Virus record (IMG/VR): IMGVR_UViG_3300042473_001265
Coordinates: 186,001-250,000 of that record
Strand: one strand, 5' to 3'
Length of the DNA stretch: 64,000 nucleotides
The translations under genes were made by a program, and so were the position numbers. Below the pieces are notes generated by a model. It was not told where the DNA came from, searched no databases, and worked only from the letters and a program-made list of their open reading frames with translations. Positions within the stretch are counted from its first letter, which is position 1. Each line of letters begins with the position of its first letter. Positions 14,376 through 30,612 of this stretch are shown piece after piece.

Positions 14376-14418
14376 TCAGAGATTGTTTGTTTTATTCATC
14401 TCAGGGATGGGAAGAATC

Positions 14419-14444
14419 AAAAAAGCGCCGCAAGGCGCTTTTTT
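14419..14444 (+). terminator. Rho-independent terminator after gp23
   Basis: AAAAAAGCGCC-GCAA-GGCGCTTTTTT. Confidence 0.9.
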
Positions 14445-14445
14445 G

Positions 14446-14474
14446 TTGACTTATGTATCTATAAATGTTATTAT
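14446..14474 (+). promoter_or_regulatory. Sigma70-like promoter for the HNH gene
   Basis: TTGACT-17 nt-TATTAT with TG extension. Confidence 0.5.
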
Positions 14475-14499
14475 AGAGCTTACTAACATAAATAAACAT

Positions 14500-15249: not shown

Positions 15250-15380
15250 TCAACCAAATAAAATACTCGGGCCTGTTTCCAGAACCGCATATCAGTCCAG
15301 TGGGCACCGTCCTGGGACTTAATCAACCTCAACCGCAGCCAGCAGTGGTGCCAGTGGCGCAGCAGCCCGTTAAATCTTAA
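15246..15380 (+). CDS. 44-aa Pro/Gln/Val-rich small protein (below the ORF-track cutoff)
   Basis: MINQIKYSGLFPEPHISPVGTVLGLNQPQPQPAVVPVAQQPVKS*; TAAATA 4 nt upstream; ATGA overlap with the HNH stop. Confidence 0.55.
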   Translation: MINQIKYSGLFPEPHISPVGTVLGLNQPQPQPAVVPVAQQPVKS

Positions 15381-16530
15381 ACAGTTTCAAGTGTAGGTTG
15401 ATTCGTTTGACCACCGTAGCCCAGTCGCCCATTGCAGGTTGTCGGAATAGTCTGGCTGTGGCATACCACGGAGTATCGTCTCGGTTCAACAGCCAGCGCC
15501 AGCATAGTCCATAACTGTTCAGCATGATCCAAGTGGGCTTGCCCAGAGCAGCAGCCAAGTGTGCAGTAGCAGTGTCCACACTCACAACCACATCAAGATT
15601 GGTCATCAATGCAGCAGTGTCATTGAATGTGGGCAAGCCACCGGGAAAACAATGAACCCCTGCTGCTACCAATTGCGCTTGTTCCGCCGCGGTGCAATCC
15701 GTTTGCAAGTTGTACCAGTCATAGTCAGTGTTGGATTGGATCAACTCCAGCATGGTTTCAAATGGCATTCCCTTGTGTTGGTTGATCCAACTGTCCCTGC
15801 GTCCTGACCAGGCAAATCCCACTCGTAATTTATGCTTGGCGCCTAGGTTCCTTCGCCAATCGTCAATGAGATTACGATCGGGTTTTAAATACTGTATGGT
15901 TGAGGGCAAGTTTTCCACACGCACATTTATTCGACCCGGAATAGTCATCAAGGGAATCCAATAATCAAAATGATCACCAGGCGATTGCGTATAAGTCAAC
16001 ACTGTGACACCTTGTCCCACATCACTGCTTTGAATCAGTGTGACCATGGCATCAGTAACTTGTATGGTCACAACAGCACCAATGTTTTTTAAGTTTTGTA
16101 CAAATCGCACAAACTGTATGATATCACCATGACCTTGTTCGCCACGAACAAAAATAGTCTTGCCTGTCAATTCTTCACCGTTCCAAACGGGCCAAGGATA
16201 ATCAGGCAAGGTGCCTTTCAAATGTTCAAAGTTGTGTCTTGCTTCGTATGCAGGCCATCCACGCTCATAGTCACCACTCATCAAATAAGCAACAGCAAGA
16301 TTAAAGTGATTGGTCACTGTGCCAGGATCCAGCTGTATGGCTCGTTGGTTGAACGGAATGGCGCCCTCAGGATCTCCCAGTTCTCTCAACACATTGCCGT
16401 AGTTGTTGAATGCACTGGCACTAGATCGATCTCCAACCATGGCATGCATGTACTGCTGTAAGGCCAGTTCTGGTTGATGTTGTTCTCTAAAGGTGTTGCC
16501 CTGGGCAATGAGTAATTCTGTGTTTTGCAT
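15370..16530 (-). CDS. TPR-repeat protein with a GT-B (GT9-like) glycosyltransferase domain
   Basis: TPRs (AFNNYGNVLRELG, HFNLAVAYL), EQGHGDIIQFVRF, LDVVVSVDTATAHLAAALGKPTW, WYATARLFRQ. Start set at ATG 16530. Confidence 0.85.
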   Translation of the reverse strand: MQNTELLIAQGNTFREQHQPELALQQYMHAMVGDRSSASAFNNYGNVLRELGDPEGAIPFNQRAIQLDPGTVTNHFNLAVAYLMSGDYERGWPAYEARHNFEHLKGTLPDYPWPVWNGEELTGKTIFVRGEQGHGDIIQFVRFVQNLKNIGAVVTIQVTDAMVTLIQSSDVGQGVTVLTYTQSPGDHFDYWIPLMTIPGRINVRVENLPSTIQYLKPDRNLIDDWRRNLGAKHKLRVGFAWSGRRDSWINQHKGMPFETMLELIQSNTDYDWYNLQTDCTAAEQAQLVAAGVHCFPGGLPTFNDTAALMTNLDVVVSVDTATAHLAAALGKPTWIMLNSYGLCWRWLLNRDDTPWYATARLFRQPAMGDWATVVKRINLHLKLFKI

Positions 16531-16577
16531 GGCAATATTTACACAGTATTGGGGCAGGTTGAAAATATCATTACAGC

Positions 16578-16670
16578 TAAATAACACTAACGCAATACTG
16601 TGTTTTATGCGGCACACCAGCCGCGTAGTAGGCTAGAACCTGCATCGGACTTCTTTAAGGAGAAAACAAA
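16578..16670 (+). promoter_or_regulatory. Late promoter and structured 5' leader
   Basis: TAAATA at 16578-16583; hairpins at 16589-16604, 16606-16627 and 16628-16643; AAGGAG SD. Confidence 0.55.
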
Positions 16671-17486
16671 ATGGGTCGTCCTCTAAAAATTCAAAAATAT
16701 TCTGCCAATTCTGGCATCAACTCACCTGGCGCTGCTGTTGCTATTGACCAGGGTTACAATCCGTTTGCTGCACCCACTGCATTGGACACTGCCACTGTGG
16801 TACTACCAAGCCCGGCAACATCACCATTGCCATTTACCGGCGTGGTTGGCGGTATTGACGGCGCTGGAGTCAGCACTACATATCCCATTGTTTCAGTCAC
16901 TTGCAACATTGAAAACAGCTATTCTGGATCTGCTGCTGGCGCAATTATTCGCCAGAAAGGTTCTCACAAATTCCTAGTGGCCACTACCACTGCTATTGAT
17001 CCTGAAAATGCAGTAGTTGGCGTTGCTCTTCAGATTGCAGTGCTGGGCGATACAGACTGGCAAGCCATGGGTGCTCCAGTTGGCGCCGATGTTGGTACCT
17101 TGTTCACTGCAACAGCAGCCGCAGGCGCAGGCACATCTGGCACAGCATTTGAAGTTGGTCAGTGTGTGTTGGCCAACGATGCAACTCCGGCCGCTGGCGA
17201 AATGAACATTGCAATGGCAGTGTCCAACGACAGTACCAATGTTTACATCAGCAAATTGACCAACAAGTTTGTACAAGACTTCAACGGTGGCGGCACTGGT
17301 GGTGTTGCCAACACTGGCGATGTTTGGGCATACACAGATGTAGTTGACGACATCGAGTATGCAGCTAACTTCTTCACTGACGTGTCTACATTTGCCAAAT
17401 CTGGTGCAGAAGTTGCTACTTGGGCAAGTACTCAACAAAACAGTGATGGCACTTTGGGACTGGCACAAGTTGACAGTACAACCTAA
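16671..17486 (+). CDS. Putative virion structural protein
   Basis: Ala/Gly/Thr-rich; strong SD, late promoter and its own terminator; MGRPLK..IIRQKGSHKFLV. Confidence 0.7.
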   Translation: MGRPLKIQKYSANSGINSPGAAVAIDQGYNPFAAPTALDTATVVLPSPATSPLPFTGVVGGIDGAGVSTTYPIVSVTCNIENSYSGSAAGAIIRQKGSHKFLVATTTAIDPENAVVGVALQIAVLGDTDWQAMGAPVGADVGTLFTATAAAGAGTSGTAFEVGQCVLANDATPAAGEMNIAMAVSNDSTNVYISKLTNKFVQDFNGGGTGGVANTGDVWAYTDVVDDIEYAANFFTDVSTFAKSGAEVATWASTQQNSDGTLGLAQVDSTT

Positions 17487-17515
17487 TAGTTCAGTTAGGT
17501 AATTTTCAACAGCCG

Positions 17516-17547
17516 ATCCCCGCAGTTAAATACTGTGGGGATTTTTT
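17516..17547 (+). terminator. Terminator hairpin carrying TAAATA in its loop
   Basis: ATCCCCGCAGT-TAAAT-ACTGTGGGGAT-TTTTT. Confidence 0.7.
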
Positions 17548-18135
17548 ATGACCGTAGCATTTGTGTTGGGAAACGGCGTCAGCAGGTCTGGCCTTCCGTT
17601 GGAACAGATTCAAAAATTGGGAAAAATTTATGGGTGTAATGCTCTCTACAGAGAGTTTACACCTGACGTTCTTGTGGCCACAGATCGTGCCATCGCTCAG
17701 CGAATACAAGAAACAGGATATTCTGCTAAAAATAAATTTTATACTCGCAAACCCATGGACGGCTTAGGTGCTCTGCGTGTGCCAACAGAATATTACGGAT
17801 TCAGTTCAGGTCCAAATGCAGTGGGCATTGCAGCCTTGGATCAGCACAATAAAATTTATATTCTAGGATTTGACATGGGACCAAGCGTACACAATCAATT
17901 CAACAACATATACGAAGGTACAGAGTTCTACAAGCCATCAGGATCCACACCCACTTATACTGGAAATTGGGTAAAACAATTGGCAAAGATAACAAAAGAT
18001 TTCTCAAACACCCAATTTATTCGCGTTTGCGGCAATACTACAGCACGATTACCAACTTTGGATAATATTACAAATTTGTCTCATGAGGATTTGGCCACCT
18101 TTCAAATGCGGATAAATAATCAAAAGGATCTATAA
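17548..18135 (+). CDS. Maf/DUF115 (MptE-like; glycosyltransferase-related fold) protein
   Basis: AFVLGNGVSR, YGCNALYR..PDVLVATD, SSGPNA, IYILGFDM. Confidence 0.6.
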   Translation: MTVAFVLGNGVSRSGLPLEQIQKLGKIYGCNALYREFTPDVLVATDRAIAQRIQETGYSAKNKFYTRKPMDGLGALRVPTEYYGFSSGPNAVGIAALDQHNKIYILGFDMGPSVHNQFNNIYEGTEFYKPSGSTPTYTGNWVKQLAKITKDFSNTQFIRVCGNTTARLPTLDNITNLSHEDLATFQMRINNQKDL

Positions 18136-18741
18136 ATGGCTACAGTAAAAAACACCAGCGACGACTACACTATCACAGTAGCAAATGGTCTTGGCCTGTT
18201 GACCATCAATGCTGATCTTGACGTTGTTGGTAACATCACATACATTGACTCCAGCGAACTTAGAGTCACAGACCCATTTATCACAGTGGCGTATGACAAC
18301 AATGGTGCAATACAGAGCATGGGTCTGGTGGCCCAAAAATCCACTACCACCTACGCAGGCCTGCGTTTCAACACAGTGGCAGGTGATTGGGAAATTAGCC
18401 CAGCGGTCGCAGCAAACGGTGCTCCGATAACAGCATATTCTACTATTTCAACCGGCGGCGCAGCCCCTGGCCTGCCATTTAATTCGGTGCAGTTCAATGG
18501 AGCAGGCACATTCACCGGCAACTCAGCTTTTACATTTGACGCTGGCAATGCCAAAGTAAACATAACAGGACAATTGGTGTTGGCCAACATAGTGTCAACA
18601 CCGGCTACCACGCCTGATGTGGCAGCACTGTACAACAAACAAGTTGGCTCCGGCGGCACAGGCGTTTATGTCATAAGTTCCGCAGTCAACGATGAACTGG
18701 TTAGCAAAACCAAAGCAATTGTATTTGGCATTATATTTTAA
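18136..18741 (+). CDS. Putative structural/fibre-associated protein
   Basis: LDVVGNIT..VTDPFITV and SVQFNGAGTFTG fibre-type motifs. Confidence 0.65.
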   Translation: MATVKNTSDDYTITVANGLGLLTINADLDVVGNITYIDSSELRVTDPFITVAYDNNGAIQSMGLVAQKSTTTYAGLRFNTVAGDWEISPAVAANGAPITAYSTISTGGAAPGLPFNSVQFNGAGTFTGNSAFTFDAGNAKVNITGQLVLANIVSTPATTPDVAALYNKQVGSGGTGVYVISSAVNDELVSKTKAIVFGIIF

Positions 18742-18750
18742 GGAATCAAC

Positions 18751-19068
18751 ATGGCAATCACCAACACTCGGTTATATGATACTAACCCAACCACTGTATT
18801 TGCAGCAACAGGACAACAAGCTATCACAGTAATGTATTTTTGTAACACAACTTCAACCACTTGCTTGATAGATGTGTTTGTAATTGACAGTTCTGACAGT
18901 ACGGGCGCTGCCTTTAGCAATATGGTATATTCTTCACTTGAACTCACAGCAAACGAAACATATGTTATATCATTGGAAAAACTCATACTTGACAACGGTG
19001 ATCTAGTTGAAGTAGAAGCCAGCGTAGCAGATTGTGTCACAGTAACAGTGAGTTCAATCGCTGTGTAA
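18751..19068 (+). CDS. Small structural protein
   Basis: 105-aa beta-rich ORF with SD; EKLILDNGD. Confidence 0.65.
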   Translation: MAITNTRLYDTNPTTVFAATGQQAITVMYFCNTTSTTCLIDVFVIDSSDSTGAAFSNMVYSSLELTANETYVISLEKLILDNGDLVEVEASVADCVTVTVSSIAV

Positions 19069-19069
19069 C

Positions 19070-19468
19070 ATGGGAAACTGGACAAAAAATCGTGTTTTGG
19101 AATCCGGCAGCACTTCAGTTGTAATGCCGTCGGGTAGTTCTGGAACTCGTCCATTGGCTCCCGTTTTTGGTCAGTTTAGATTCAACACCGATAGTGCCAG
19201 TGTAGAATTTTATAACGGATCAATCTGGGTTACTTTGGCCAACGGTGGCGGTGTGTCATATGATGTTGACAGTTTTGTTGGCGACGGCAGTACTACTGTG
19301 TTCACAATGTCTATTCCTGAAAGTCTGGCGTCACAACTGATTGTGTTTGTGGGCAGTGTCTATCAAATACCCACTACAAACTACACTGTAAACGGTGGTT
19401 TCAGTATTACATTTACCAGTGCTCCGCCAAATGGATTGCCAATCAATGTAATTCACAGCACCAGTTAA
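19070..19468 (+). CDS. Small baseplate/fibre-associated protein
   Basis: GQFRFNT and GDGSTTVFT..VYQIP...Y..ITFTSAP modules also present in neighbouring genes. Confidence 0.7.
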   Translation: MGNWTKNRVLESGSTSVVMPSGSSGTRPLAPVFGQFRFNTDSASVEFYNGSIWVTLANGGGVSYDVDSFVGDGSTTVFTMSIPESLASQLIVFVGSVYQIPTTNYTVNGGFSITFTSAPPNGLPINVIHSTS

Positions 19469-19498
19469 CTAACTAAATACCCTGTTAGGGAAAAACCA

Positions 19499-21589
19499 AT
19501 GGCCATTAGTAAAATTGCAGGACAGATGTTGAAAGACAATCTCGAAAGAGACGGTGCTAATCTGGCAATTTCTGACACTGTGGCTGATACTCCAGTGGTG
19601 TTTGTTGACATACCCAACAGTCGTGTTGGATTTAACACTGCTGCACCTAACGCTACCGTAGATGTAGTGGGAAATATTCTAGCAGGAAATATTGCTGCGG
19701 CAGCAAACATATCGTCTGTGACACAGATATCCAATGTGCTGGTAGTTGTACAAACTGCCAACATTGGTGGTGTTAATATTGTAGGCAATGCTATTTCTGC
19801 AGACTCTGGTATATTGGCACTGGGATCTGCTGCAAACATTTCAATCACCGGCGGCTCACTCAATTACATTCTATCCACAGACGGAACAGGCAATCTATCC
19901 TGGGCGTCAATTAGCAATGTTGGCGCCATCGGCAATAACATTGCAATGGGCACCAACACATTGGGAAATCTTGTTAGTAATGCAGTTACATTGACAACCA
20001 CAACATCTGTCACAGATGGTATAACACAATTGAACTTGGTGCTGGGCAAACTGGTACCACCTAGCCCGCCCAATTTTCCCGGCGGCCAAACACTCAGTAT
20101 ATCCAGTGTTGCGACCTACAGAATGGCCAACATTGTTCAGACTGACAACACTCCTGGTGCCAACAAAGCAGTTGCAGCCGGCACCTCGGTGGCCAGTGTG
20201 CGTAGAGCAGCTACTTACGCCACCAACACTATCAGCACAGTGGGGCCTGGAGATACTGGTGTAATTACCGCAGTGGTCAATGGTGCCAATGTGGGAACAG
20301 TGACACTCAATGCTGCGGCAACCCCAACTGCCAATGGCACATACGGCGGCAATCTTGTTATCACTAACAACTATGATTACAATGTGGCCAATGCCAGTGT
20401 TGCATCAGGTTTTTGGTATGTGTTTTCGTCGGCAATTTCTGGCAGTAATGCACCGGCCGGGTGGAATGAACTTTACATAGCAGATTCTGCTGTGGGCAAT
20501 ACCAATACCCCCAGCTGGTACTATGACAACAGCAGTCCTGCAACTCCCAGTTTCAGCAGCAGCACAATGACACCACCGGGGTCACCAACTGTGGCCTACA
20601 GCAGTACTATTCCGCATTACACCAGTGCTACTCAATTTGCCATTACTGCCAATGTGGCCAATGTCAGTGGCAATACATATCCAACTTCAAATGTGTTAGC
20701 GTCTGGCACTGCTGCCGGAAGTTTTGCAGCGCCTGCGTCAGTCAATTACAATGCCAGCAACATTGGCAGCAATGTGCTTAATTCTTTTGCATCAGCGTCT
20801 TTTTCAACAACCAGCACTGTGACCACTGGATTTGGATCTAGCTCAACAGGGCCCAGTATAAGTGTCAACAACAGTTACAGCACAGGTACATTGACGTTGA
20901 CCGCAGCACTGGGCAATATAGTACTGCGTAAAACTGGTTCTGCTACCGCAGTGGACGAAGGCAACATTGTTGTGACCAGTGTTGGTTCTGGCAGTGGAAA
21001 TGCTGTGCGTATTGTGAACCCCGGCAGTGGAAACACACCTGCGTACACGGGCAGCGAAGCAAATTTTGATAGCCAATCATCTACTTTGGAAACATACGAT
21101 GCTGTTGTGGTAGGCAGTGCGTCTCAGGGTGTGCTCAAACACGATCAAACCAACTATGCCACTGGGTATTTGCCAGCAGGCCCCAATCTAAGCGCAGGCC
21201 GATCTGGAACACAGTACTTTACATTTAAGTTTGTGCGGGCCGATGTGAGTAAATTTGATATCACCTATGCTGGCAATGTGGCCGGCATGTGGGTGGCATT
21301 GCCCGGCAGTGTGATAGACGCCAGTTCTGGAGCAAACGGTTGGATCAACATGACAGTGGCCTACGCAGGAGCCGGATATCCCGGTGTCAACTCGCCCGGC
21401 AACGGGTCTGATGGTTGCAGTCTTGGCGGTGTGGTTGTGCCCAATGTGAACACAGCAAGCGTCAGCAAGACCTGTACATTTGGCACAGTGTCAAGTTCAA
21501 GCACTGGCACAAACGAAATTTATGTGAGACTGAGTCTTACATCTGGTCAATCAGTTACTGGCCTTTCATTAAAAGCAGCGAGTAACTGA
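19499..21589 (+). CDS. Ser/Thr/Gly/Asn-rich structural (fibre/baseplate) protein
   Basis: 696 aa, low-charge beta-type composition; TAAATA upstream. Confidence 0.7.
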   Translation: MAISKIAGQMLKDNLERDGANLAISDTVADTPVVFVDIPNSRVGFNTAAPNATVDVVGNILAGNIAAAANISSVTQISNVLVVVQTANIGGVNIVGNAISADSGILALGSAANISITGGSLNYILSTDGTGNLSWASISNVGAIGNNIAMGTNTLGNLVSNAVTLTTTTSVTDGITQLNLVLGKLVPPSPPNFPGGQTLSISSVATYRMANIVQTDNTPGANKAVAAGTSVASVRRAATYATNTISTVGPGDTGVITAVVNGANVGTVTLNAAATPTANGTYGGNLVITNNYDYNVANASVASGFWYVFSSAISGSNAPAGWNELYIADSAVGNTNTPSWYYDNSSPATPSFSSSTMTPPGSPTVAYSSTIPHYTSATQFAITANVANVSGNTYPTSNVLASGTAAGSFAAPASVNYNASNIGSNVLNSFASASFSTTSTVTTGFGSSSTGPSISVNNSYSTGTLTLTAALGNIVLRKTGSATAVDEGNIVVTSVGSGSGNAVRIVNPGSGNTPAYTGSEANFDSQSSTLETYDAVVVGSASQGVLKHDQTNYATGYLPAGPNLSAGRSGTQYFTFKFVRADVSKFDITYAGNVAGMWVALPGSVIDASSGANGWINMTVAYAGAGYPGVNSPGNGSDGCSLGGVVVPNVNTASVSKTCTFGTVSSSSTGTNEIYVRLSLTSGQSVTGLSLKAASN

Positions 21590-22908: not shown

Positions 22909-23054
22909 AATAATTTTTTCCCTGCTTCATTGTCAATTTAACAACTGCTGAGCAGTGTATTCCTACGATTTTGGTAAATAACACTGTAATACTATACATT
23001 TGGCAAAATAAGTTGTTGGGTGAGCGAAACAGAATACCAAAACGGGAGTTTTAA

Positions 23055-26000
23055 ATGGCTGTAACAAGAATTAAGAATAATCAGATCACTGATGCAACCA
23101 TTGTTGCCAGTTCAAAGTTGGTTGATTATTCGATCAGTGCGGCAAAAATCGCCAACAACTTGACATACGGGTCAGACTTGACCATCACCGGGAACTTGAC
23201 AGTTCAAGGTAATACCACTGCAATTGACACCAACATCACTACCATTGAAGATCCAGTTATTTTGCTGGCATCAACACAGACAGGTAATGCAGCAGTTGAC
23301 ATTGGTTTCATTGGACAACGCGGTTTGCAAACAAACATTGCGTTTGTGTGGGATGAAAGCCAGGGTGTTTTTGTAACAGCATTCACAGACACACCTGAAA
23401 CAGCAACAACAATCAACATCACTGCGTATGCCAGCACAAAAGTATTGAATTCAGAAGTGACTGGCAATCTAGCTGTCACCGGTCAGAGCAATTTGGCCAA
23501 CATCCTAGTTGCTGCAAATTCATCTGTGAGTTTTGGCAACAATAAAATTAGCAATGTGGCTGACCCAGTAGGCGCTCAAGACGCAGCAACCAAAAACTAT
23601 GTTGACAGTGAACTCAGTAGTTCTGCGTTTAGTATCAGTGATGGGGTTACTACAGAATCAATTGTTGGCGGCGACACCATTGACTTTGAAGGCAGCACAA
23701 ACATCACCGTTGCAGTTGCCTCGGTCACTGGCAATATAAGCAGTGTCACTGCCACACTGACAAACGACGTCTCTATCAGTGGCAACTTTAGTGCCACTGG
23801 AACAATCACATCAAATACCACAATCACAGGTGGCAATGTGGCCACTGGTGGCACAGTCAGTGCTACTGGCACAATCACAGGTGGCAATGTGGCCACTGGT
23901 GGAACTGTCAGCTCCACCGGAACTGCCACAGTGGGTAATTTGGACACAGGTGGAACTGTCAGCTCAACCGGAACTGCCACAGTGGGTAATTTGGCCACAG
24001 GTGGCACTGTCAGCGCGACCAGTACAATCACTGGTGGCAATGTCAGTGCAGGCAGTGGATATATTTCTACAACTGGCAATGTCAACGCTGGCAATGTCAA
24101 CACAACAAGTATTGTTGGTGCAACAGTAACTGTTACATCTGCAGGTACTATTACATTTGCTGGCACACAGATTGATGCCAACAGCACAAAAATTATTAAT
24201 CTGGGTACTCCAACTGCTGGAACTGATGCTGCCAATAAAGATTATGTTGACAGCGTAGCACAAGGATTGAATATCAAAGCGTCAGTTCGTGTTGCTACTG
24301 CTGCTGCACTGCCAGCATACACCTACAACAATGGTACTGCTGGAGTTGGTGCAACTATTACTGCCGATGCAGTTGGTGCATTGGTTGTGGACGGGCAAAC
24401 ACTCACAGTGGTAGGTACTAGAGTTCTAGTTAAAAACGAAATAGGTGATGTTTCCGGCGCAAACTCAGCATACAACGGTATCTACACATTGACCACAGTT
24501 GGCACTGGCGGCGTGGCATTTGTGTTGACTCGTTCATTGGATATGAATGTGGCAGCAGAATTTGATGGTGCATTTACTTTTGTTTCCATTGGTACTGTAA
24601 ATGCAGACACTGGTTGGGTACAAACAAATGAAATTGCCACAGTTGGTACAACTCCGGTGTATTGGACACAGTTCTCCGGCGCTGGAGAATACACTGCTGG
24701 CAATGGTTTAACTTTAACAGGCACAGTATTCAGCGTCAATGTTGACGAAGTCACAACCACAATCAGCGGTGACAATGTTATTGTCAAAGCAAGCGCTCAA
24801 TTTACCACACCAAACATTGGTGCTGCTACCGGTACAAGTTTAAGTGTCACTGGTACAATTGCTGCTGATGGCACAGCCACAGTAGGTAATGTTGCAACTG
24901 GTGGAACTGTCAGTGCAACCGGCAACATCACCGGTGGTAATATTTTAACAAGTGGTGCAGGCGGCGCCATTTCTGGTTCTGGTAATATCACAGGTGGTAA
25001 TATCTTAACAGGTGGATTAATTAGTGCAGCTGGCACTGTTACAGGTGGCAACATTGCCACTGGTGGAACAGTTAGTTCAACTGGAACTGCTACTTTAGGT
25101 AATGTTGCAACTGGTGGCACAGTCAGTGCTACTGGTACAATCACATCAGCCGACACAATCACCGGTGGCAACTTGGCCACAGGCGGCACAGTCAGTGCAA
25201 CTGGCACAGCCACAGTAGGCAATTTGGCCACAGGTGGCACAGTCAGTGCAACCGGCACTGCTACTGTAGGTAATGTGGCTACAGGTGGCACTGTAAGTGC
25301 TACAGGCAATATCACCGGCGGTAATATCACAACAGCTGGTACCAGCACACTGGGCAACATTGTGATCAGCGGTGACGATATCACTGACACAAATGGCCGA
25401 GTAAACTTCAACACAGCCGGTGGCGATGTGGACTTTGCAGTCAACGGCGACACAGTGGCCAATGTGTTCTATGTGGATGCCGGCACAGGCACAGCCAGTT
25501 TTGGTAGTGCTACACAAACTACCGGTGCTGTGCTAGCATTGAACGCTGTTACATCGTTCTTGGTTCCGGTTGGAAATATTGGTCAACGACCAACTGGTGT
25601 AACTGGTATGTTGCGTTTCAACAGCCAAGAAAACTATATGGAAGTGTTCGACAACACTGAATGGACAGCAGTTGCTGCGCCACCTATCACTGTGATCACT
25701 GACGACCAGTTCAACGGTGACGGCAGCACAACAGTGTTTACATTGAGTGTGGCATCTACCACAGCTGGTACTATTGTGGCAATCAACGGTGTACAACAGT
25801 TGCCCACAGTGGCCTACGCCATATCAGGTACAACACTGACATTCACAGAAGCTCCAGCATCAGGCGACGTGATTGACAGTCGTGTGTTGACCACTACCAG
25901 CTCTGTTACTGCTCTACAAAACGGCAACAGTTCTGTTCAAATTCCATCCAGCGCCGGCAACATTGTTACCGATGTCAACGGTACAACAATAATGACTGTG

Positions 26001-26972
26001 AGTCCCGGCCTAGTAAATATACAAGGCAACTTGACTGTGAGTGGCAACGCCACACTGAGCGGCAACATTCTAGGCGATAGAATCCAAAACGGCACAACCA
26101 GTTTGGATATTCAATCACCTGGTGGCAATGCCAACATCAGTATAGGTGGTACCAGCAATGTGGCAGTGTTTACCACTGCTGGATTAAATGTTACTGGGGT
26201 AATTAGTGCAACCGGCAACATCACTGGTAATTATATTTTTGGTAATGGCTCGCAACTGACTGGTATTGATGCAACTAGTATTCAAAATGGCACATCAAGT
26301 TTATCAGTTATTGCCAGTGGTGGAAACATCCGTGGCAACATAGCTGGCAACACCGTAACAACAACACACGCAGGCGGGTTTGATGTGACTGGCAATATAG
26401 TCTTGAGCGGTGGAATTCAAGACTATGCCCAATTGGATATCCAGACCACCGCCGGCAATGCCAATATCGTGTTGACACCCCATGGCACTGGTAATGTTAA
26501 CTTTGGCAGCAACATCATGCCAACAGCCAATGCCACTGCCAATATTGGCAGTGCTACATCAAGCTTCAACACTATATTTGCCAAAGCAACATCGGCACAA
26601 TACGCTGACTTGGCAGAGAAGTATGCAGCAGATGCTGAATACGCTCCAGGCACAGTGGTATCGTTTGGTGGTGATGCAGAGGTCACTGCCAGTATCGATG
26701 CCGACAGTCGTGTAGCAGGTGTGGTCAGTACAAACCCAAGTTACATCATGAACGGTGGATTACAAGCCGAACATGTTGTCACAGTGGCGTTGACAGGTCG
26801 TGTACCAACTCGTGTCACTGGAACTGTACGCAAAGGTGATTTGATGGTAAGCGCTGGCGATGGCGCAGCTCGTGCTGAAGCTGTTCCAGCACCAGGTACA
26901 ATCATTGGTAAAGCACTGGCCAACCATGACGGTGCAGAAGGTACTATAGAAGTGGTAGTGGGACGCTTCTAA
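23055..26972 (+). CDS. Long tail-fibre-like protein with 17-aa repeats and a C-terminal chaperone/peptidase-like domain
   Basis: DAATKNYVD motifs, GN(V/L)ATGGTVSATG repeats, YADLAEKY..VAGVVST.P..VALTGRVP..KGDL..IGKAL. Confidence 0.8.
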   Translation: MAVTRIKNNQITDATIVASSKLVDYSISAAKIANNLTYGSDLTITGNLTVQGNTTAIDTNITTIEDPVILLASTQTGNAAVDIGFIGQRGLQTNIAFVWDESQGVFVTAFTDTPETATTINITAYASTKVLNSEVTGNLAVTGQSNLANILVAANSSVSFGNNKISNVADPVGAQDAATKNYVDSELSSSAFSISDGVTTESIVGGDTIDFEGSTNITVAVASVTGNISSVTATLTNDVSISGNFSATGTITSNTTITGGNVATGGTVSATGTITGGNVATGGTVSSTGTATVGNLDTGGTVSSTGTATVGNLATGGTVSATSTITGGNVSAGSGYISTTGNVNAGNVNTTSIVGATVTVTSAGTITFAGTQIDANSTKIINLGTPTAGTDAANKDYVDSVAQGLNIKASVRVATAAALPAYTYNNGTAGVGATITADAVGALVVDGQTLTVVGTRVLVKNEIGDVSGANSAYNGIYTLTTVGTGGVAFVLTRSLDMNVAAEFDGAFTFVSIGTVNADTGWVQTNEIATVGTTPVYWTQFSGAGEYTAGNGLTLTGTVFSVNVDEVTTTISGDNVIVKASAQFTTPNIGAATGTSLSVTGTIAADGTATVGNVATGGTVSATGNITGGNILTSGAGGAISGSGNITGGNILTGGLISAAGTVTGGNIATGGTVSSTGTATLGNVATGGTVSATGTITSADTITGGNLATGGTVSATGTATVGNLATGGTVSATGTATVGNVATGGTVSATGNITGGNITTAGTSTLGNIVISGDDITDTNGRVNFNTAGGDVDFAVNGDTVANVFYVDAGTGTASFGSATQTTGAVLALNAVTSFLVPVGNIGQRPTGVTGMLRFNSQENYMEVFDNTEWTAVAAPPITVITDDQFNGDGSTTVFTLSVASTTAGTIVAINGVQQLPTVAYAISGTTLTFTEAPASGDVIDSRVLTTTSSVTALQNGNSSVQIPSSAGNIVTDVNGTTIMTVSPGLVNIQGNLTVSGNATLSGNILGDRIQNGTTSLDIQSPGGNANISIGGTSNVAVFTTAGLNVTGVISATGNITGNYIFGNGSQLTGIDATSIQNGTSSLSVIASGGNIRGNIAGNTVTTTHAGGFDVTGNIVLSGGIQDYAQLDIQTTAGNANIVLTPHGTGNVNFGSNIMPTANATANIGSATSSFNTIFAKATSAQYADLAEKYAADAEYAPGTVVSFGGDAEVTASIDADSRVAGVVSTNPSYIMNGGLQAEHVVTVALTGRVPTRVTGTVRKGDLMVSAGDGAARAEAVPAPGTIIGKALANHDGAEGTIEVVVGRF
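23790..24100 (+). repeat. Tandem ~51-bp (17-aa) fibre repeats, block 1 (boundaries approximate)
   Basis: Recurrent GCCACTGGTGGCACAGTCAGTGC-like units. Confidence 0.8.
24860..25340 (+). repeat. Tandem ~51-bp (17-aa) fibre repeats, block 2 (boundaries approximate)
   Basis: Same TxGNxATGGTVSATGT unit repeated several times. Confidence 0.8.
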
Positions 26973-26990
26973 ACAGGTAACGCTGTACAG

Positions 26991-27017
26991 GATAGGGTCT
27001 TCGGACCCTATCTTTTT
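26991..27017 (+). terminator. Rho-independent terminator (cUUCGg loop)
   Basis: GATAGGGTC-TTCG-GACCCTATC-TTTTT. Confidence 0.9.
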
Positions 27018-27036
27018 ATCGGATAGGTAGAATATT

Positions 27037-27360
27037 ATGACAGTAAGCATTGGACCAGGATGGACGATAGGAGCAGGTTGGCAAATAGGTGTAGAAGTAT
27101 TTCTTACTACTACAGGTGCTCAAAATTATGCAGCCGATGGTGCAACCATGAACACTTTCAGAGTGTTACTCAGAGGCGGCAACTGGGATGAGTTTTATGC
27201 AAATTATACCAACGGCACTTGGTCTTGTGTAGAAATTCCTGGATCAGTAGTCGTCAATATGGCTATCCCTGATCCTAGCGAACCAGAGAGTCCAAGCATT
27301 ACCATCACTGGTGGCACGTTTGTTCTGAATAACTCCTACACTTTCCAAGGATACGCATAA
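27037..27360 (+). CDS. Small protein, paralog 1 (IGPGWTIGAGW N-terminus)
   Basis: Shares N- and C-terminal motifs with 27363-27695. Confidence 0.7.
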   Translation: MTVSIGPGWTIGAGWQIGVEVFLTTTGAQNYAADGATMNTFRVLLRGGNWDEFYANYTNGTWSCVEIPGSVVVNMAIPDPSEPESPSITITGGTFVLNNSYTFQGYA

Positions 27361-27362
27361 TC

Positions 27363-27695
27363 ATGCCAGTAACAATAGGACCAGGATGGACCATAGGCGC
27401 AGGGTGGGCAATAGATGGTGGCCCCACTCTTGTCACGACCAGCAGTGGTCAAAACGTTGGCGGCAGTCCAAACACTCAAGGATTTTTCTTTGCTGTGTTA
27501 AACAGAAGCGAACCGGGTTGGGATTACTTTGCAGCCAATGGCAACAACGGAAATTGGACAGCCACTGGTGATTTTGGCAGCGGTACTGCCACTGTTCCTG
27601 TACTCAGCGTGCCACAAGATGCTGATTCAGTTTACCCAATAGTAAGCGGCGGCCTATTTCAGCCTGGGTTATTTTATACTTTCCAGGGATATTAA
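27363..27695 (+). CDS. Small protein, paralog 2 (IGPGWTIGAGW N-terminus)
   Basis: IGPGWTIGAGW.I ... YTFQGY, as in the preceding gene. Confidence 0.7.
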   Translation: MPVTIGPGWTIGAGWAIDGGPTLVTTSSGQNVGGSPNTQGFFFAVLNRSEPGWDYFAANGNNGNWTATGDFGSGTATVPVLSVPQDADSVYPIVSGGLFQPGLFYTFQGY

Positions 27696-27712
27696 ACTAT
27701 AATTTTTAACTC

Positions 27713-27743
27713 AAAACAGGACTCTTCGGAGTCCTGTTTTTTT
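27713..27743 (+). terminator. Rho-independent terminator (cUUCGg loop) followed by a TAAATA box
   Basis: AAAACAGGACTC-TTCG-GAGTCCTGTTTTTTT. Confidence 0.9.
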
Positions 27744-27776
27744 GGCTAAATACAGCTAACAAACTGGAAAAAATCA

Positions 27777-28850
27777 ATGGGATTAACTAGACCTCGCGCC
27801 GCACAGATTTTTGATATAGACTACAAGCAAGCAACTCGTGTAATTACCGTTGCCAACATAACTTTGGCCGGCGGAGCTCCAGCAGTGGTCGACGGTGTCA
27901 GCTTGGTCTTGAACGATCGTGTATTGGTCACAGGTCAAACCACAGCCAGTCAAAACGGTTTGTATGATGTAACTGTGGTGGGTGTGGGATCTGACGGCAC
28001 CTGGGAAAGAACCAGCGATGGCAATCAAACAGGAGAAATTCTTGCCGGCATGATTGTCATGGTGACCGAAGGTACAATCTATGCTGACACACAGTGGAAA
28101 CTAATAACAGACAATCCCATTGTGATTGGAACAACTGCACTGACATTTGAACTCAACACCAGTGGCAATTCAATTTCCAATGGCACAAGCAACATAACAG
28201 TTCTAAACAATGCCAATGTCAATGTCACAGTGGCCAATGTTCAAATTGCTGCGTTTGCATCAACTGGATCGTATGTAACCGGATTGATTTCCGCAACTGG
28301 TAATGTTACTGTAGGTAATTTATTAACTGGGGGGATCATCAGTACCACTGGCAACATCACCGGTAACAATATTCTGGGCAATGGCGCTGCTCTTTCTGGC
28401 ATCAATGCGTTCAGCAACGTCACTGTCACTGGCGGAAACAGTGCAGTAGCAGACTCAATTTCCGATACTCTAACTTTAACAGCTGGCAGCGGTATTAGTA
28501 TTGTGATTGATTCAACCACAGATACCATAACCATTGGCACTCAACTTGGTAGTGAAATTTTTGTAGACGGCGCAGATTTTGGCACAGTAACTGAAACAGT
28601 GACCGTGAGTGACGATCTAGGGCTGGTCACTGCCGCCGTGGAGAGTGAAGCAGATCTTGGCACACTGGTGTTGTCGGGCCTGATCTATCCAGATCAGTTT
28701 GTTTTGCCCAGTTATACCACCAGTACATTGCCCAGCGCCGCAGTGACAGGCTCCATGATATATGTGACCAATGAATCTGGTGGAGCAGTGCCAGCCTTTG
28801 CTGACGGCACAAATTGGCGCAGGGTAACAGACCGTGCCATAATAACATAA
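27777..28850 (+). CDS. Tail-fibre-associated structural protein
   Basis: DGVSL..NDRVLVTGQT.ASQNGLY.V module, related to one in the 23055 gene. Confidence 0.72.
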   Translation: MGLTRPRAAQIFDIDYKQATRVITVANITLAGGAPAVVDGVSLVLNDRVLVTGQTTASQNGLYDVTVVGVGSDGTWERTSDGNQTGEILAGMIVMVTEGTIYADTQWKLITDNPIVIGTTALTFELNTSGNSISNGTSNITVLNNANVNVTVANVQIAAFASTGSYVTGLISATGNVTVGNLLTGGIISTTGNITGNNILGNGAALSGINAFSNVTVTGGNSAVADSISDTLTLTAGSGISIVIDSTTDTITIGTQLGSEIFVDGADFGTVTETVTVSDDLGLVTAAVESEADLGTLVLSGLIYPDQFVLPSYTTSTLPSAAVTGSMIYVTNESGGAVPAFADGTNWRRVTDRAIIT

Positions 28851-28870
28851 ATAGCATATAGGAATTTAAA

Positions 28871-29950
28871 ATGTCTTCACAAGTACAATACAGACGCGGA
28901 ACTAACGCACAAAATGCAGCATTCACCGGCGCCTTGGCTGAAATCACTGTGGACACCACAAATGGCACTTTGCGAGTGCATGATGCCATCACAGTGGGCG
29001 GTAGCAATATTGCCACAGTGGCTTATGTAACATCACAAATCAGTGCTCTAAGTGCCAATTCAATTACATCTGGTACCAGCAATTTTTCAATCATTGCCAG
29101 TGGCGGCAACATCCGTGGAAATGTAGGCGGAGCAACTGTAACAAATATTTATTCTGGTGGTATAGAACTGACTGGATTGCTCAGTGCCACAGGCAACGTC
29201 TCGGCTGAAAACTTAAATATCACAGGTAATATTGTTGACACAGGTGCATTGAGTATTATCACAGGCAGCAACGGAAACATTGCATTGTCGCCCAACGGCA
29301 CTGGTATGGTCAATATCAGCAGTGCGTTAAGTGTTACAGGCAACATTACCACTGGTAATTTACTCATAGGTGGTGCAATTCAAGACTATGCTCAATTGGA
29401 CATTCAGACCACTGCTGGCAATGCTAATATTGTGTTGACACCCAATGGTACCGGTAATGTTAATTTTGGCAGCAACATTATGCCAACTGCCAATGCCACT
29501 GCTAATATTGGCAGTGCCACTTCAAGTTTCAACACTGTGTTTGCCAAGGCCACATCGGCACAATACGCTGACTTGGCAGAAAATTATCTAGCTGATGCTG
29601 CATATGCCCCGGGCACCGTGATTGAATTTGGCGGCAACAGCGAAGTCACAGTATCTACTGTGGACCACAGCACAGCCGTTGCTGGTATTGTCAGCACAGA
29701 TCCTGCTTATTTGATGAATTCACATTTGCAAGGCGTTTATGCTGTGGCTGTTGCTTTGATCGGTCGTGTGCCGTGTCGAGTGCAGGGGCCTGTGAAAAAA
29801 GGATCTGTATTGGTCACCGGCACAGTTCCTGGAACAGCTATGGCCATTGATAATTTAAAATTTAAACCAGGCTGTGTGGTTGGCAAGGCAATGGAAACAA
29901 TTGATTCCGTTGATGTAAAAACTATTGAAGTGGCCGTTGGACGATTATGA
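28871..29950 (+). CDS. Fibre protein with Mtd-N-like N-terminus and C-terminal chaperone-like domain
   Basis: VQYRRGT..FTGALAEITVDT..LRVHD; YADLAENY..VALIGRVP..KG..VGKAM. Confidence 0.75.
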   Translation: MSSQVQYRRGTNAQNAAFTGALAEITVDTTNGTLRVHDAITVGGSNIATVAYVTSQISALSANSITSGTSNFSIIASGGNIRGNVGGATVTNIYSGGIELTGLLSATGNVSAENLNITGNIVDTGALSIITGSNGNIALSPNGTGMVNISSALSVTGNITTGNLLIGGAIQDYAQLDIQTTAGNANIVLTPNGTGNVNFGSNIMPTANATANIGSATSSFNTVFAKATSAQYADLAENYLADAAYAPGTVIEFGGNSEVTVSTVDHSTAVAGIVSTDPAYLMNSHLQGVYAVAVALIGRVPCRVQGPVKKGSVLVTGTVPGTAMAIDNLKFKPGCVVGKAMETIDSVDVKTIEVAVGRL

Positions 29951-30612
29951 TCACGGCTCATTATCGTAGTGATTACGAAGGCGAATTTGTAATTACCGAA
30001 AGCCGATGGTCCGGCGGCAAAAAAACACAAACCAGAGAATGGATTGCCAATCCAATTGCTAACCAACACATCAGCGGCCGAGCTGCGTGTATTGCCAGCG
30101 GCATTGACAAAGAAAAATTTGATTACAAAAAATTAGAACGACATCGGGGCGGCTTGCTGGGCTCAAAAAAACTACAAACATACGGAACCGGTTCTATCAC
30201 AAAAGAAATGCGATTGGATTTTGCTGTTGAAATTAACAAACTGATTCTCAAAGACATATTAGATCGTGGATATTCCACTGACAACATTGTGTACACCACC
30301 ACACGAAATTGTTTGGTCAATCCCGGTGAGTTCTATTTGATACCATACAACACTCTCATGGCAATGGAAGCATTGATACTATGGCTGGCAGCATTTGACG
30401 GACATAAAGAAATATTCATGTTAGGCTACAACAACTTGACACCGGGCACCACCAGTGAATGGATGTCACATGTGAATTCAGTGATTGCTGCATTTCCGTC
30501 GGTTAAATTTATATTAGCTGGCGAAGAAACTGTTATGCCACGAGAATGGCGAAAAAATGCCAATGTTGAGTGTATAAATTATCGTGAGTTCGTCACTCAC
30601 TGCGACGTTTGA
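29947..30612 (+). CDS. Divergent Maf/DUF115-like protein
   Basis: AACIASG..LQTYG..LAAFDGHKEIFMLGY resembles the 17548 gene. Confidence 0.5.
   Translation: MITAHYRSDYEGEFVITESRWSGGKKTQTREWIANPIANQHISGRAACIASGIDKEKFDYKKLERHRGGLLGSKKLQTYGTGSITKEMRLDFAVEINKLILKDILDRGYSTDNIVYTTTRNCLVNPGEFYLIPYNTLMAMEALILWLAAFDGHKEIFMLGYNNLTPGTTSEWMSHVNSVIAAFPSVKFILAGEETVMPREWRKNANVECINYREFVTHCDV

What the first reader, a model, noticed from the sequence alone, without database searches (positions are those of the whole stretch)
15370..30612. Glycosyltransferase-like genes bracket a Ser/Thr/Asn-rich fibre cluster: candidate virion glycosylation system
Seen: a TPR-GT (15370-16530) and two Maf/DUF115-like genes (17548-18135 and 29947-30612) lie at either end of ~12 kb of fibre genes rich in Thr/Ser and NxT/S. 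The first two have TAAATA boxes, and the third is coupled to a fibre gene. Established: Maf proteins and TPR-containing GTs glycosylate flagellins and other proteins. Inference: the phage decorates its own virion proteins.
Basis: partly seen in the sequence, partly recalled or inferred. Interest (0 to 1): 0.6.

Follow-up and report, generated by a model that had tools for sequence, protein, structure and literature searches.

The report
Phage late-gene protein-glycosylation enzyme module
A 340-kb marine T4-like jumbo phage carries, inside its head/tail gene block, a TPR-linked GT9-like glycosyltransferase and a stripped-down Maf/sialyltransferase-like enzyme (plus a degenerate copy), which probably put sugars on a phage structural protein; the genes that always travel with them are an unknown abundant late protein, not the fibres.

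Summary
Gene 15370-16530(-) is three TPRs plus a GT9-like domain. Gene 17548-18135 ("MafA") belongs to a phage-only family of over 3,000 proteins. Its profile hits GT42 sialyltransferases (E 1e-8) and its model best matches the catalytic domain of Maf (Z 13.1). Gene 29947-30612 ("MafB") is a true paralog (hhalign 99.6%) with the same fold. It has replaced the motif residues invariant in the MafA family (N9, N31, D109), so its activity is doubtful.

The link to the fibres is weak:
- The fibre cassette varies from 12 bp to about 12 kb among relatives.
- TPR-GT, p271 and MafA persist without the cassette.
- NxS/T sites exceed the count expected from composition by only 1.2-fold.

The constant partner is p271 (16671-17486). 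It is an unknown late gene with a strong ribosome-binding site, its own TAAATA box and a conserved terminator.

The phage has no CMP-sugar synthetase (PF02348) or NeuB gene, so a CMP-sugar donor would have to come from the host. A second glycan-gene cluster (GT25, GT8, methyltransferases) lies just beyond the window.

Virion-protein glycosylation is the best reading (about 0.45) but is unproven. Remodelling of the host envelope is the main rival.

The parts
15370..16530 (-). TPR-GT: three N-terminal tetratricopeptide repeats plus a C-terminal GT9-like (heptosyltransferase-like) domain, 386 aa
   Evidence: Pfam TPR families and PF01075 at 26.7 bits against a cut-off of 22. Homologs are 386 aa and carry PF01075 in precomputed hits. 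The D-T-A/H-L motif aligns to D261-T262-G263 of WaaC. 26 of 30 ESM-Atlas feature hits are GT9 clusters, score 0.97.
16536..16541 (-). TAAATA box 5 nt upstream of the TPR-GT start codon
   Evidence: Read. Kept as TAAATA plus 4-6 nt plus start codon in 26 of 26 relatives.
16577..16583 (+). CTAAATA box 88 nt upstream of p271, in the divergent intergenic region
   Evidence: Its reverse complement (gTATTTAt) is kept in the relatives' intergenic regions.
16671..17486 (+). p271: unknown Ala/Gly/Thr-rich late protein with invariant N-terminus MGRPLKI and a strong ribosome-binding site. It is the most constant neighbour of both enzymes and the candidate acceptor.
   Evidence: It abuts MafA in 65 of 67 loci. 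Alignment A5. No Pfam, PHROG, NCBIfam or PDB match.
17515..17543 (+). Intrinsic terminator hairpin after p271.
   Evidence: Best terminator-like site in the region, 12 pairs. Kept in 14 of 14 relatives, with compensatory changes in 4 of 12 pairs.
17548..18135 (+). MafA: a 195-aa minimal Maf/DUF115/GT42-like transferase consisting of the catalytic core only
   Evidence: Invariant residues are N9 G10 R13 N31 G88 G107 D109. The shared motifs GNGxS, CNxxY and SSG...GFD align to CstII.
18112..18118 (+). ATAAATA box (followed by AAGGA) inside the last codons of MafA, 18 nt before the p201 start
   Evidence: Kept at the DNA level in 29 of 30 relatives. The one relative without p201 lacks it.
18136..29950 (+). 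Variable cassette of fibre-like and structural genes: p201, p105, p132, p696, p439, p1305, p107, p110, p357, p359
   Evidence: Tail-fibre and virion PHROGs and Phage_T7_tail hits. 17-26% Ser+Thr. The cassette length between MafA and the NUDIX gene ranges from 12 bp to about 9 kb in relatives.
29947..30612 (+). MafB: a 221-aa paralog of MafA with an extra N-terminal beta-hairpin and replaced motif residues (GNG to IGS, CN to TG, GFD to LGY, FNNxY loop deleted). It overlaps fibre gene p359 by 4 nt.
   Evidence: It is present only where the cassette is long: 4 of 4 long cassettes against 0 of 6 short ones.

Best explanation
This is a late-expressed, cytoplasmic protein-glycosylation module of a clade of marine T4-like jumbo phages of about 340 kb.

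- **TPR-GT.** It has the FlmG-type layout. By analogy, the TPR part holds a folded protein acceptor and the GT9-like part transfers a nucleotide-activated sugar. ADP-heptose is the family's usual donor.
- **MafA.** It is the bare catalytic core of a Maf/sialyltransferase-type enzyme. It most likely transfers a CMP-activated ulosonic acid to Ser or Thr. The donor would be host CMP-Kdo or a host nonulosonic acid, because the phage makes no CMP-sugar of that type itself.
- **Acceptor.** The most likely acceptor is p271, the abundant unknown late protein encoded between the two enzyme genes. It may be a head or tail surface protein. The fibre proteins are possible further acceptors.
- **MafB.** It is a diverged copy that probably no longer catalyses the same reaction. 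It may serve the fibre cassette it travels with.

Shown: the folds and families, the synteny, and the promoter and terminator signals. Inferred: the donors, the acceptors, and that any glycan ends up on the virion.
For: Enzyme identities.

Family range. The MafA family is large and essentially viral: 3,108 proteins, 1,306 clusters at 50% identity, and genome hits only on MAG contigs that carry phage genes.

Synteny over about 80 loci, down to 59% identity:
- p271 abuts MafA in 65 of 67 loci.
- TPR-GT lies in 49 of 53 MCP-to-MafA intervals.

Late signals. TAAATA is enriched ninefold at gene starts. The boxes before TPR-GT and p271 are conserved.

Independent contexts for TPR-GT9 homologs:
- Two genes after the major capsid gene of a 44-kb podovirus, beside a methyltransferase and a galT-like gene.
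- Among the fibre and baseplate genes of cyanophage S-SRM01.

Precedents:
- In FlmG and Maf-1 the TPR domains bind the acceptor (PMC7591256; 10.1101/2023.12.03.569772).
- Maf enzymes accept CMP-Kdo made by E. coli (10.1101/2020.06.03.131540).
- Glycoproteins have been seen in virions of jumbo phage XacN1 (PMC5852040) and of mycobacteriophages (as cited in PMC12619734).
Against: - There are no data on any glycan.
- p271 has no recognisable fold or family, so it is not shown to be a virion protein.
- MafA itself does not reach the Pfam thresholds for PF01973 or PF06002.
- MafA has no invariant His at the position of the CstII catalytic base.
- The genome has no CMP-sugar synthetase (PF02348) or NeuB gene.
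- The GT9 match covers only 33 of 247 profile positions, and the domain was not folded.
- In pelagiphage HTVC008M the homolog lies between uvsY and uvsW, not among structural genes.
- In two distant phage contigs the homolog sits inside a cluster of other glycosyltransferase-like genes. That pattern fits glycan building on any acceptor, including host lipid or polysaccharide.
Confidence: 0.45

Rival explanations
1. The enzymes remodel host envelope glycans (LPS core, capsule or flagellin) late in infection rather than phage proteins. Possible purposes are blocking superinfection or keeping progeny from sticking to debris.
For: GT9 is an LPS-core family. About 34 kb downstream the genome holds GT25 'LPS biosynthesis' (56.7 bits), GT8 (31.7 bits), a GT2-like gene, a pyruvyl-transferase-like gene, four methyltransferases and a cytidylyltransferase-like/cupin protein. 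In distant contigs L009 and L010 the MafA-like gene directly follows homologs of three genes of that cluster. Similar clusters in cyanophages are read as cell-surface modification (PMC12801897).
Against: TPR domains point to a protein acceptor. The genes sit in the head/tail block behind conserved late boxes. p271, a phage protein, is the constant partner. TPR-GT homologs in two other phage lineages also lie among structural genes.
Confidence: 0.22
2. MafB is not a transferase. It is a diverged, catalytically dead paralog that acts as an assembly or specificity factor for the fibre gene it is coupled to.
For: The residues invariant in the MafA family (N9, N31, D109) are replaced and the FNNxY loop is deleted. 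It overlaps p359 by 4 nt, the usual position of a fibre chaperone. It is present only with long fibre cassettes, 4 of 4 against 0 of 6. It still has strong conservation of its own, with 64 invariant columns.
Against: It keeps the whole fold. It has a new invariant set (H41, D59, H66, D151, H153, E155) that could form a different active site. In L076 a p359-like gene abuts the NUDIX gene without MafB.
Confidence: 0.35
3. MafA and MafB are MptE- or thiamin-pyrophosphokinase-like small-molecule kinases or nucleotide-binding proteins, not glycosyltransferases.
For: The fold is shared with M. jannaschii HPPK (MptE) at Z 9.3 and 10.8, and with thiamin pyrophosphokinases at Z 7-8. The Pfam family hit by relatives is named MptE-like.
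Against: Among solved chains, the family profile matches significantly only sialyltransferases. The match goes through the donor-site motifs GNGxS, CNxxY and SSG...GxD. Maf is the top structural match and stands clear of the rest for MafA. Phage neighbours are glycosyltransferases, not folate or thiamin genes.
Confidence: 0.08
4. The enzymes glycosylate hypermodified phage DNA, as T4 glucosyltransferases do.
For: The phage is T4-like. The HTVC008M homolog lies between uvsY and uvsW. Phage glycosyltransferases often act on DNA (as reviewed in PMC12619734).
Against: The timing signals are late and the genes sit in the structural block. A TPR domain fits a protein acceptor. The known T4 DNA glucosyltransferases (own knowledge) are neither GT9-like nor Maf-like.
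Confidence: 0.05

Closest known systems
Maf (motility accessory factor) flagellin nonulosonic-acid transferases, e.g. Magnetospirillum Maf (PDB 5mu5), Clostridium botulinum and Geobacillus Maf, Shewanella Maf-1 and Maf-2
   Same: The catalytic-domain fold is shared (Z 13.1 and 11.2). Both are soluble cytoplasmic enzymes. MafA keeps conserved acidic residues and a Ser-Gly turn (D46, S87-G88, D109), where Maf needs two acidic residues and a Ser (10.1101/2020.06.03.131540). Maf needs a separate acceptor-binding part, either a TPR domain or GlfM (10.1101/2023.12.03.569772). Here a TPR protein is encoded two genes away.
   Different: MafA is only 195 aa, with no N- or C-terminal acceptor-binding domains. 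It does not reach the PF01973 threshold. There is no nonulosonic-acid synthesis gene in the genome. There is no flagellin, and the family is phage-only.
GT42 sialyltransferases CstII and Cst-I (Campylobacter) and the Pasteurella multocida LOS sialyltransferase 9c08
   Same: Profile-to-sequence matches at E 1.4e-8 to 1.6e-6. Residues 8-12 (GNGxS) and 30-34 (CNxxY) align position for position, and the SSG...GxD region also aligns.
   Different: No invariant His aligns with the catalytic base His188 or His202 (PMC4202792). The lid and C-terminal regions are missing. The GT42 acceptors are oligosaccharides of LOS.
FlmG (Caulobacter, Brevundimonas): TPR plus GT-B flagellin O-glycosyltransferase
   Same: Both have an N-terminal TPR and a C-terminal GT-B-type domain, are soluble, and work on folded proteins in the cytoplasm (PMC7591256; 10.1101/2022.03.25.485807).
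   Different: Sequence relatedness was not tested here. The phage enzyme is shorter (386 aa against 596). Its catalytic half scores as GT9, whose known donors are ADP-heptoses, whereas FlmG uses CMP-Pse or CMP-Leg.
Autotransporter heptosyltransferases (TibC/AAH family) and LPS heptosyltransferases WaaC/WaaF (GT9)
   Same: The GT9 donor-site motif is shared: D-T-x-x-x-H-L aligns to WaaC D261-T262-G263. By own knowledge, TibC and AAH decorate beta-helical surface proteins in the cytoplasm using a host LPS precursor.
   Different: Only a 33-residue stretch matches the GT9 model. TibC has no TPR. The donor here is unknown.
Virion glycosylation in mycobacteriophages (Che8 and others) and glycoproteins in jumbo phage XacN1
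   Same: Phage-encoded glycosyltransferases are linked to glycans on capsid and tail proteins (PMC12619734 citing Freeman 2023; PMC5852040).
   Different: The enzyme families are unrelated: tblastn found no homologs of TPR-GT or MafA in those phages. The hosts differ, and here there is no biochemical evidence.

Membership tests
GT9 (Pfam PF01075 Glyco_transf_9) | HMM score over the curated cut-off | tested here: met
   26.7 bits against 22 and 26.3 bits in the genome search. The match covers only profile positions 173-205 of 247.
GT9 (Pfam PF01075 Glyco_transf_9) | Donor-site D-T-G...H-L motif of the C-terminal Rossmann half | tested here: met
   The invariant D319 T320 A321 ... H324 L325 aligns to WaaC 259-SVDTGLSHL.
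GT9 (Pfam PF01075 Glyco_transf_9) | Two-Rossmann GT-B fold over the whole catalytic region | not tested
Indirect support only: 26 of 30 ESM-Atlas feature hits are GT9 clusters at 0.97.
GT9 (Pfam PF01075 Glyco_transf_9) | Transfer from ADP-heptose | not testable with these tools
   Needs an enzyme assay.
Maf / DUF115 (Pfam PF01973 MptE-like, Maf_flag10) | Catalytic-domain fold | tested here: met
   MafA: Z 13.1, rmsd 3.7, 167 residues to 5mu5 272-514. MafB: Z 11.2, 172 residues.
Maf / DUF115 (Pfam PF01973 MptE-like, Maf_flag10) | HMM score over the curated cut-off (34.6 bits) | tested here: not met
   There is no hit for MafA or MafB. 19 of 69 relatives give weak hits, best E 3.6e-4. One relative, P0253, reaches 49.9 bits.
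Maf / DUF115 (Pfam PF01973 MptE-like, Maf_flag10) | Flanking acceptor-binding domains (N-terminal domain, C-terminal TPR or a GlfM partner) | tested here: not met
   MafA is 195 aa and the catalytic core fills all of it.
Maf / DUF115 (Pfam PF01973 MptE-like, Maf_flag10) | Two acidic catalytic residues plus a conserved Ser | tested here: inconclusive
   D46 (at least 90% conserved), S87-G88 and D109 (invariant) exist in MafA. Their equivalence to Maf E324/D415 and the Ser was not shown residue by residue. MafB lacks D109.
Maf / DUF115 (Pfam PF01973 MptE-like, Maf_flag10) | Linked CMP-nonulosonic-acid synthesis genes | tested here: not met
   There is no PF02348 or PF03102 match in the 98%-complete genome.
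GT42 (CstII / Cst-I, Pfam PF06002) | Sequence relatedness including the N-terminal GNGxS and CNxxY motifs | tested here: met
   Profile A2 against PDB gives E 1.4e-8 to 1.6e-6 with both motifs aligned. PHROG 4603 scores E 6e-5.
GT42 (CstII / Cst-I, Pfam PF06002) | Catalytic base His188 (CstII) or His202 (Cst-I) | tested here: not met
   No His is invariant in 69 diverse members. The aligned position in the family is Thr or Gly.
GT42 (CstII / Cst-I, Pfam PF06002) | PF06002 score over the cut-off (25 bits) | tested here: not met
   There is no hit for MafA. 13 of 69 relatives give weak hits, best E 8.6e-5.
FlmG-class protein O-glycosyltransferases | N-terminal TPR plus C-terminal GT-B architecture | tested here: met
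   TPRs at residues about 10-95 and a GT9-like domain at about 100-386 of the 386-aa protein.
FlmG-class protein O-glycosylransferases | Sequence homology to FlmG; TPR binds the acceptor protein | not tested
   No FlmG sequence was available by reference.
T4-type late transcription unit | TATAAATA-like box just upstream of late genes | tested here: met
   22 of 40 TAAATA copies lie within 120 nt before a start, against 6% by chance. The boxes are conserved before TPR-GT, p271 and p201, but not before MafA.

The most novel reading that the evidence does not exclude
A phage-specific family of minimal 195-aa Maf-like transferases has more than 3,000 known members, all unannotated. Together with a TPR-GT9 enzyme, it uses host LPS precursors (CMP-Kdo, ADP-heptose) to coat an abundant capsid- or tail-surface protein (p271) with acidic sugars. 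Glycan-coated virions would then be common among marine T4-like and jumbo phages.
Probability: 0.25. Interest if true: 0.75.

Novelty: new variant of a known kind. Interest (0 to 1): 0.55.

Why it matters
Glycans on phage particles are documented for only a few phages. There they change antibody recognition and probably adsorption and stability.

If this module glycosylates a structural protein, three things follow:
- It would give a function to a very large, uncharacterised phage protein family.
- It would show the smallest known Maf-type catalytic unit, useful for glyco-engineering. It would also be a case where acceptor recognition is supplied in trans.
- It would suggest that marine jumbo phages commonly carry a sugar coat built from host LPS precursors.

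If the target is instead the host envelope, the family is a new tool for phage-driven surface remodelling. Either outcome can be tested by co-expression in E. coli.

Tried and rejected
- **Near-identity DNA search.** The search against GenBank phages found nothing. The record is an uncultured IMG/VR contig.
- **Single-sequence and close-family PDB searches.** For MafA and MafB these gave nothing. Only the diverse profile A2 reached the sialyltransferases.
- **MafB profile against PDB.** It gave only spurious ankyrin-like hits.
- **p271.** Pfam, PHROGs, NCBIfam, a PDB profile and ESM-Atlas gave nothing usable; the best Atlas score was 0.83, with a 'cement protein' cluster at rank 22.
- **Mapping Maf catalytic residues through P0253.** This failed because 5mu5 was not hit.
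- **NxS/T enrichment as evidence of N-glycosylation.** Rejected: the excess is 1.2-fold over composition.
- **The MafA TAAATA box as a conserved promoter.** Rejected: it is kept in 6 of 30 relatives and lies in a terminator loop.
- **'Moraphage' jumbo phages (PMC12619734).** They are a different lineage.

Full report
**Setting.** The window is bases 186001-250000 of a 340,172-bp IMG/VR virus record that is 98% complete. Its major capsid protein (13167-14375) is 62-66% identical to those of the T4-related jumbo phages PA5oct, Vibrio 2.275.O and Xanthomonas XaC1. The region in question lies in the head/tail block. The gene order is:
- scaffold (12048-13148)
- MCP (13167-14375)
- a homing endonuclease (14383-15249)
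- TPR-GT on the minus strand
- p271
- MafA
- about 12 kb of fibre-like genes
- MafB
- on the minus strand, a NUDIX gene, a gp3-like sheath stabiliser and a virion protein

**TPR-GT (15370-16530, minus strand).**
- Pfam finds several TPR families and Glyco_transf_9 above its cut-off, but over only 33 residues.
- More than 3,500 homologs exist. The close ones are 386 aa, which fixes the start at ATG 16530, and most carry PF01075 in precomputed hits.
- A profile of the C-terminal 286 residues aligns its invariant D-T-A...H-L to the S-V-D-T-G-L-S-H-L donor-site motif of E. coli WaaC, though weakly (E 0.48).
- NCBIfam gives weak heptosyltransferase I/III matches at the same place.
- The ESM-Atlas feature search puts 26 of 30 hits in GT9 clusters at score 0.97.
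- I did not fold this protein, because both fold jobs went to the Maf-like genes. The GT-B fold is therefore inferred.

**MafA (17548-18135).**
- It has 3,108 relatives at E ≤ 1e-3 in the 90% clusters. In the 50% library it has 1,306 representative clusters. Nearly all are about 190-200 aa and unnamed.
- Across 69 diverse members the invariant residues are N9, G10, R13, N31, G88, G107 and D109. G8, S12, C30, Y34, D46, N119, N120, Y122 and Y128 are conserved in at least 90%.
- The family profile hits solved GT42 sialyltransferases (P. multocida 9c08, CstII, Cst-I) at E 1.4e-8 to 1.6e-6. GNGxS and CNxxY align at the same residue numbers as in CstII, and SSG...GFD aligns to TSG...GID.
- 19 of 69 members give weak PF01973 hits and 13 give weak PF06002 hits. 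One 435-aa relative passes the PF01973 cut-off.
- The AF2 model is confident, at pLDDT 90.7.
- Foldseek ranks Cst-I, Maf and CstII first.
- The Foldseek-independent search ranks the Maf catalytic domain first at Z 13.1. It stands clear of MptE-type HPPK and Cst-I (both 9.3), SteA and the thiamin pyrophosphokinases.
- No His is conserved where CstII has its catalytic base His188 (PMC4202792).
- Maf relies on two acidic residues and a Ser (10.1101/2020.06.03.131540). MafA has candidates for these in D46, D109 and S87. This equivalence is my inference and was not aligned residue by residue.

**MafB (29947-30612).**
- It is a real paralog: BLASTP E 2e-8 and hhalign 99.6%.
- It has the same fold: Maf Z 11.2, HPPK 10.8, and CstII as the top Foldseek hit.
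- In its own well-conserved family of 1,508 proteins, GNG has become IGS, YGCN has become YGTG, GFD has become LGY, and the FNNxYxGTxFY loop is gone. A 45-residue N-terminal extension has been added.
- It is therefore unlikely to do what MafA does. It may be inactive, or it may have a new site: H41, D59, H66, D151, H153 and E155 are invariant.

**Is the arrangement functional?** I fetched 80 related viral loci and 11 'genome' loci. All 11 are MAG contigs, and every one examined carries phage genes, so the family is effectively phage-only. The order MCP, (HEG), TPR-GT(-), p271, MafA, p201, p105, p132... is kept down to 59% MafA identity. The counts are:
- p271 abuts MafA in 65 of 67 loci.
- TPR-GT lies between MCP and MafA in 49 of 53 loci.
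- p201 follows MafA in 67 of 73 loci.
- The distance from MafA to the NUDIX gene ranges from 12 bp (L072) through 280 bp, 1.4 kb, 4.6 kb and 6.7 kb to about 9 kb.
- MafB is present only in the four loci with a long cassette.

So the fibre genes are a variable cassette. The 'bracket' looks like a by-product of how that cassette sits between two paralogs. The conserved unit is TPR-GT, p271 and MafA.

**Composition.** Fibre-like ORFs are 17-26% Ser+Thr and Asn-rich. NxS/T sites number 86 against 70.5 expected from composition. Such composition is usual for fibres and is no evidence of glycosylation.

**Expression signals.**
- TAAATA is a genuine start-proximal element: 22 of 40 copies lie within 120 nt upstream of a same-strand start, against 6% by chance.
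- The divergent TPR-GT/p271 intergenic region holds two boxes, one for each gene. Both are conserved in all 26 relatives examined.
- p271 also has the strongest ribosome-binding site in the region (AAGGAG) and ends in a 12-bp terminator hairpin. The hairpin is kept in 14 of 14 relatives, with compensatory changes in 4 pairs.
In 24 of 30 relatives it reads TAAGTA, TATATA or TACATA instead.
- MafA is therefore probably made at a low level, either by read-through or from a weak loop promoter. That would suit an enzyme encoded behind an abundant substrate. This step is inference.
- The last eight codons of MafA encode an ATAAATA box plus AAGGA for p201. These are kept at the DNA level in 29 of 30 relatives. 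They are absent in the one relative that has no p201.
- The invariant C-terminal R-I-N-N-x-K-D of MafA thus reflects an embedded promoter and ribosome-binding site, not catalysis.

**Donor supply and wider context.**
- The genome has no CMP-NulO/Kdo synthetase (PF02348) or NeuB gene. A CMP-activated donor would therefore have to be the host's.
- CMP-Kdo is accepted by Maf enzymes (10.1101/2020.06.03.131540).
- Just past the window (G000 250-260 kb, L099) lies a second sugar cluster. It holds four methyltransferases, a GT2-like gene, GT25, a pyruvyl-transferase-like gene, GT8 and a cytidylyltransferase-like/cupin protein.
- In two distant phage contigs the MafA-like gene directly follows homologs of three genes from that cluster. 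This ties MafA to glycan building, but it equally fits a host-envelope target.
- In HTVC008M the homolog sits between uvsY and uvsW.
- TPR-GT9 homologs occur two genes after the MCP of a 44-kb podovirus, next to FkbM-methyltransferase and galT-like genes. They also occur among the fibre and baseplate genes of S-SRM01. This recurrent link to structural genes favours a virion-protein target.

**Comparison with what is known.** The logic matches bacterial flagellin glycosylation. FlmG is a TPR plus a GT-B domain, and its TPR binds the acceptor (PMC7591256; 10.1101/2022.03.25.485807). Maf-1 uses its own TPR, and Maf-2 needs a separate specificity factor (10.1101/2023.12.03.569772). The phage version differs in several ways:
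- Its Maf is reduced to the catalytic core.
- Its TPR enzyme is GT9-like.
- There is no donor pathway in the genome.
- The acceptor must be a phage or host protein other than flagellin.

Virion glycosylation is itself known in mycobacteriophages (cited in PMC12619734) and was suggested for XacN1 (PMC5852040). The enzymes there are unrelated.

**Verdict.**
- The enzyme assignments are well supported for TPR-GT and MafA, and doubtful for MafB as an active enzyme.
- 'The phage decorates its own virion proteins' remains a reasonable but unproven inference (about 0.45). p271 is a better candidate acceptor than the fibres.
- Expression data and a complex prediction could not be obtained.

Noticed in passing
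window 18106-18135 (end of MafA) and 18136 (start of p201): A late-promoter-like ATAAATA box and an AAGGA ribosome-binding site for p201 are encoded inside the last eight codons of MafA (R-I-N-N-x-K-D-L). They are kept at the DNA level in 29 of 30 relatives. The only relative lacking them (L072) has no p201 and a different MafA C-terminus.
   Followed up: yes
window 17515-17543: A conserved intrinsic terminator lies between p271 and MafA. It has compensatory base changes in 4 of 12 pairs across 14 relatives. Its 3' arm and T-run run straight into the MafA start codon, so read-through transcripts would have the MafA ribosome-binding region buried in the stem.
   Followed up: partly
L099 (G000:C1:250001-262000), just beyond the window end: A cluster of sugar-related genes: four methyltransferases, a GT2-like gene, GT25 (56.7 bits), a polysaccharide pyruvyl-transferase-like gene, GT8 (31.7 bits), and a cytidylyltransferase-like plus mannose-6-P-isomerase/cupin protein. 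It also holds two paralogous unknown proteins of 280 and 302 aa. Homologs of these, and of the GT2-like gene, flank MafA-like genes in L009 and L010.
   Followed up: partly
L100:1110-1709 (G000:C1:321609-322208): A third, very weak MafA-like ORF of 199 aa (E 3.5e-5 to the family HMM) with no Pfam hit.
   Followed up: partly
window 14383-15249: A homing-endonuclease gene (PHROG 655, E 5e-50) sits between the MCP gene and TPR-GT. It is present in only some relatives and sits at varying positions, so it is a mobile insertion.
   Followed up: partly
protein P0253 (from the representative library): A 435-aa relative looks like a tandem duplication of the MafA unit, with a second GNGtSR motif near residue 235. 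It is the only member found that passes the PF01973 cut-off.
   Followed up: no
window 30597-31091 and 31019-32431, minus strand: The NUDIX ORF and the gp3-like sheath-stabiliser ORF overlap by 73 nt as called from the first start codon. The true NUDIX or gp3-like start may lie further in.
   Followed up: no
L003/L004, L006, L007, L008, L009, L010 (genome contigs): Contigs filed under bacterial or archaeal MAGs carry T4-like phage genes: MCP 72% identical in L003 and L004, and other homologs of this phage's ORFs elsewhere. The MAGs are labelled Neomarinimicrobiota, Erysipelotrichaceae, Melainabacteria, Pacearchaeota, Verrucomicrobia and Rickettsiales. These contigs are probably phage sequence mis-binned into the MAGs. 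One is 335 kb.
   Followed up: partly
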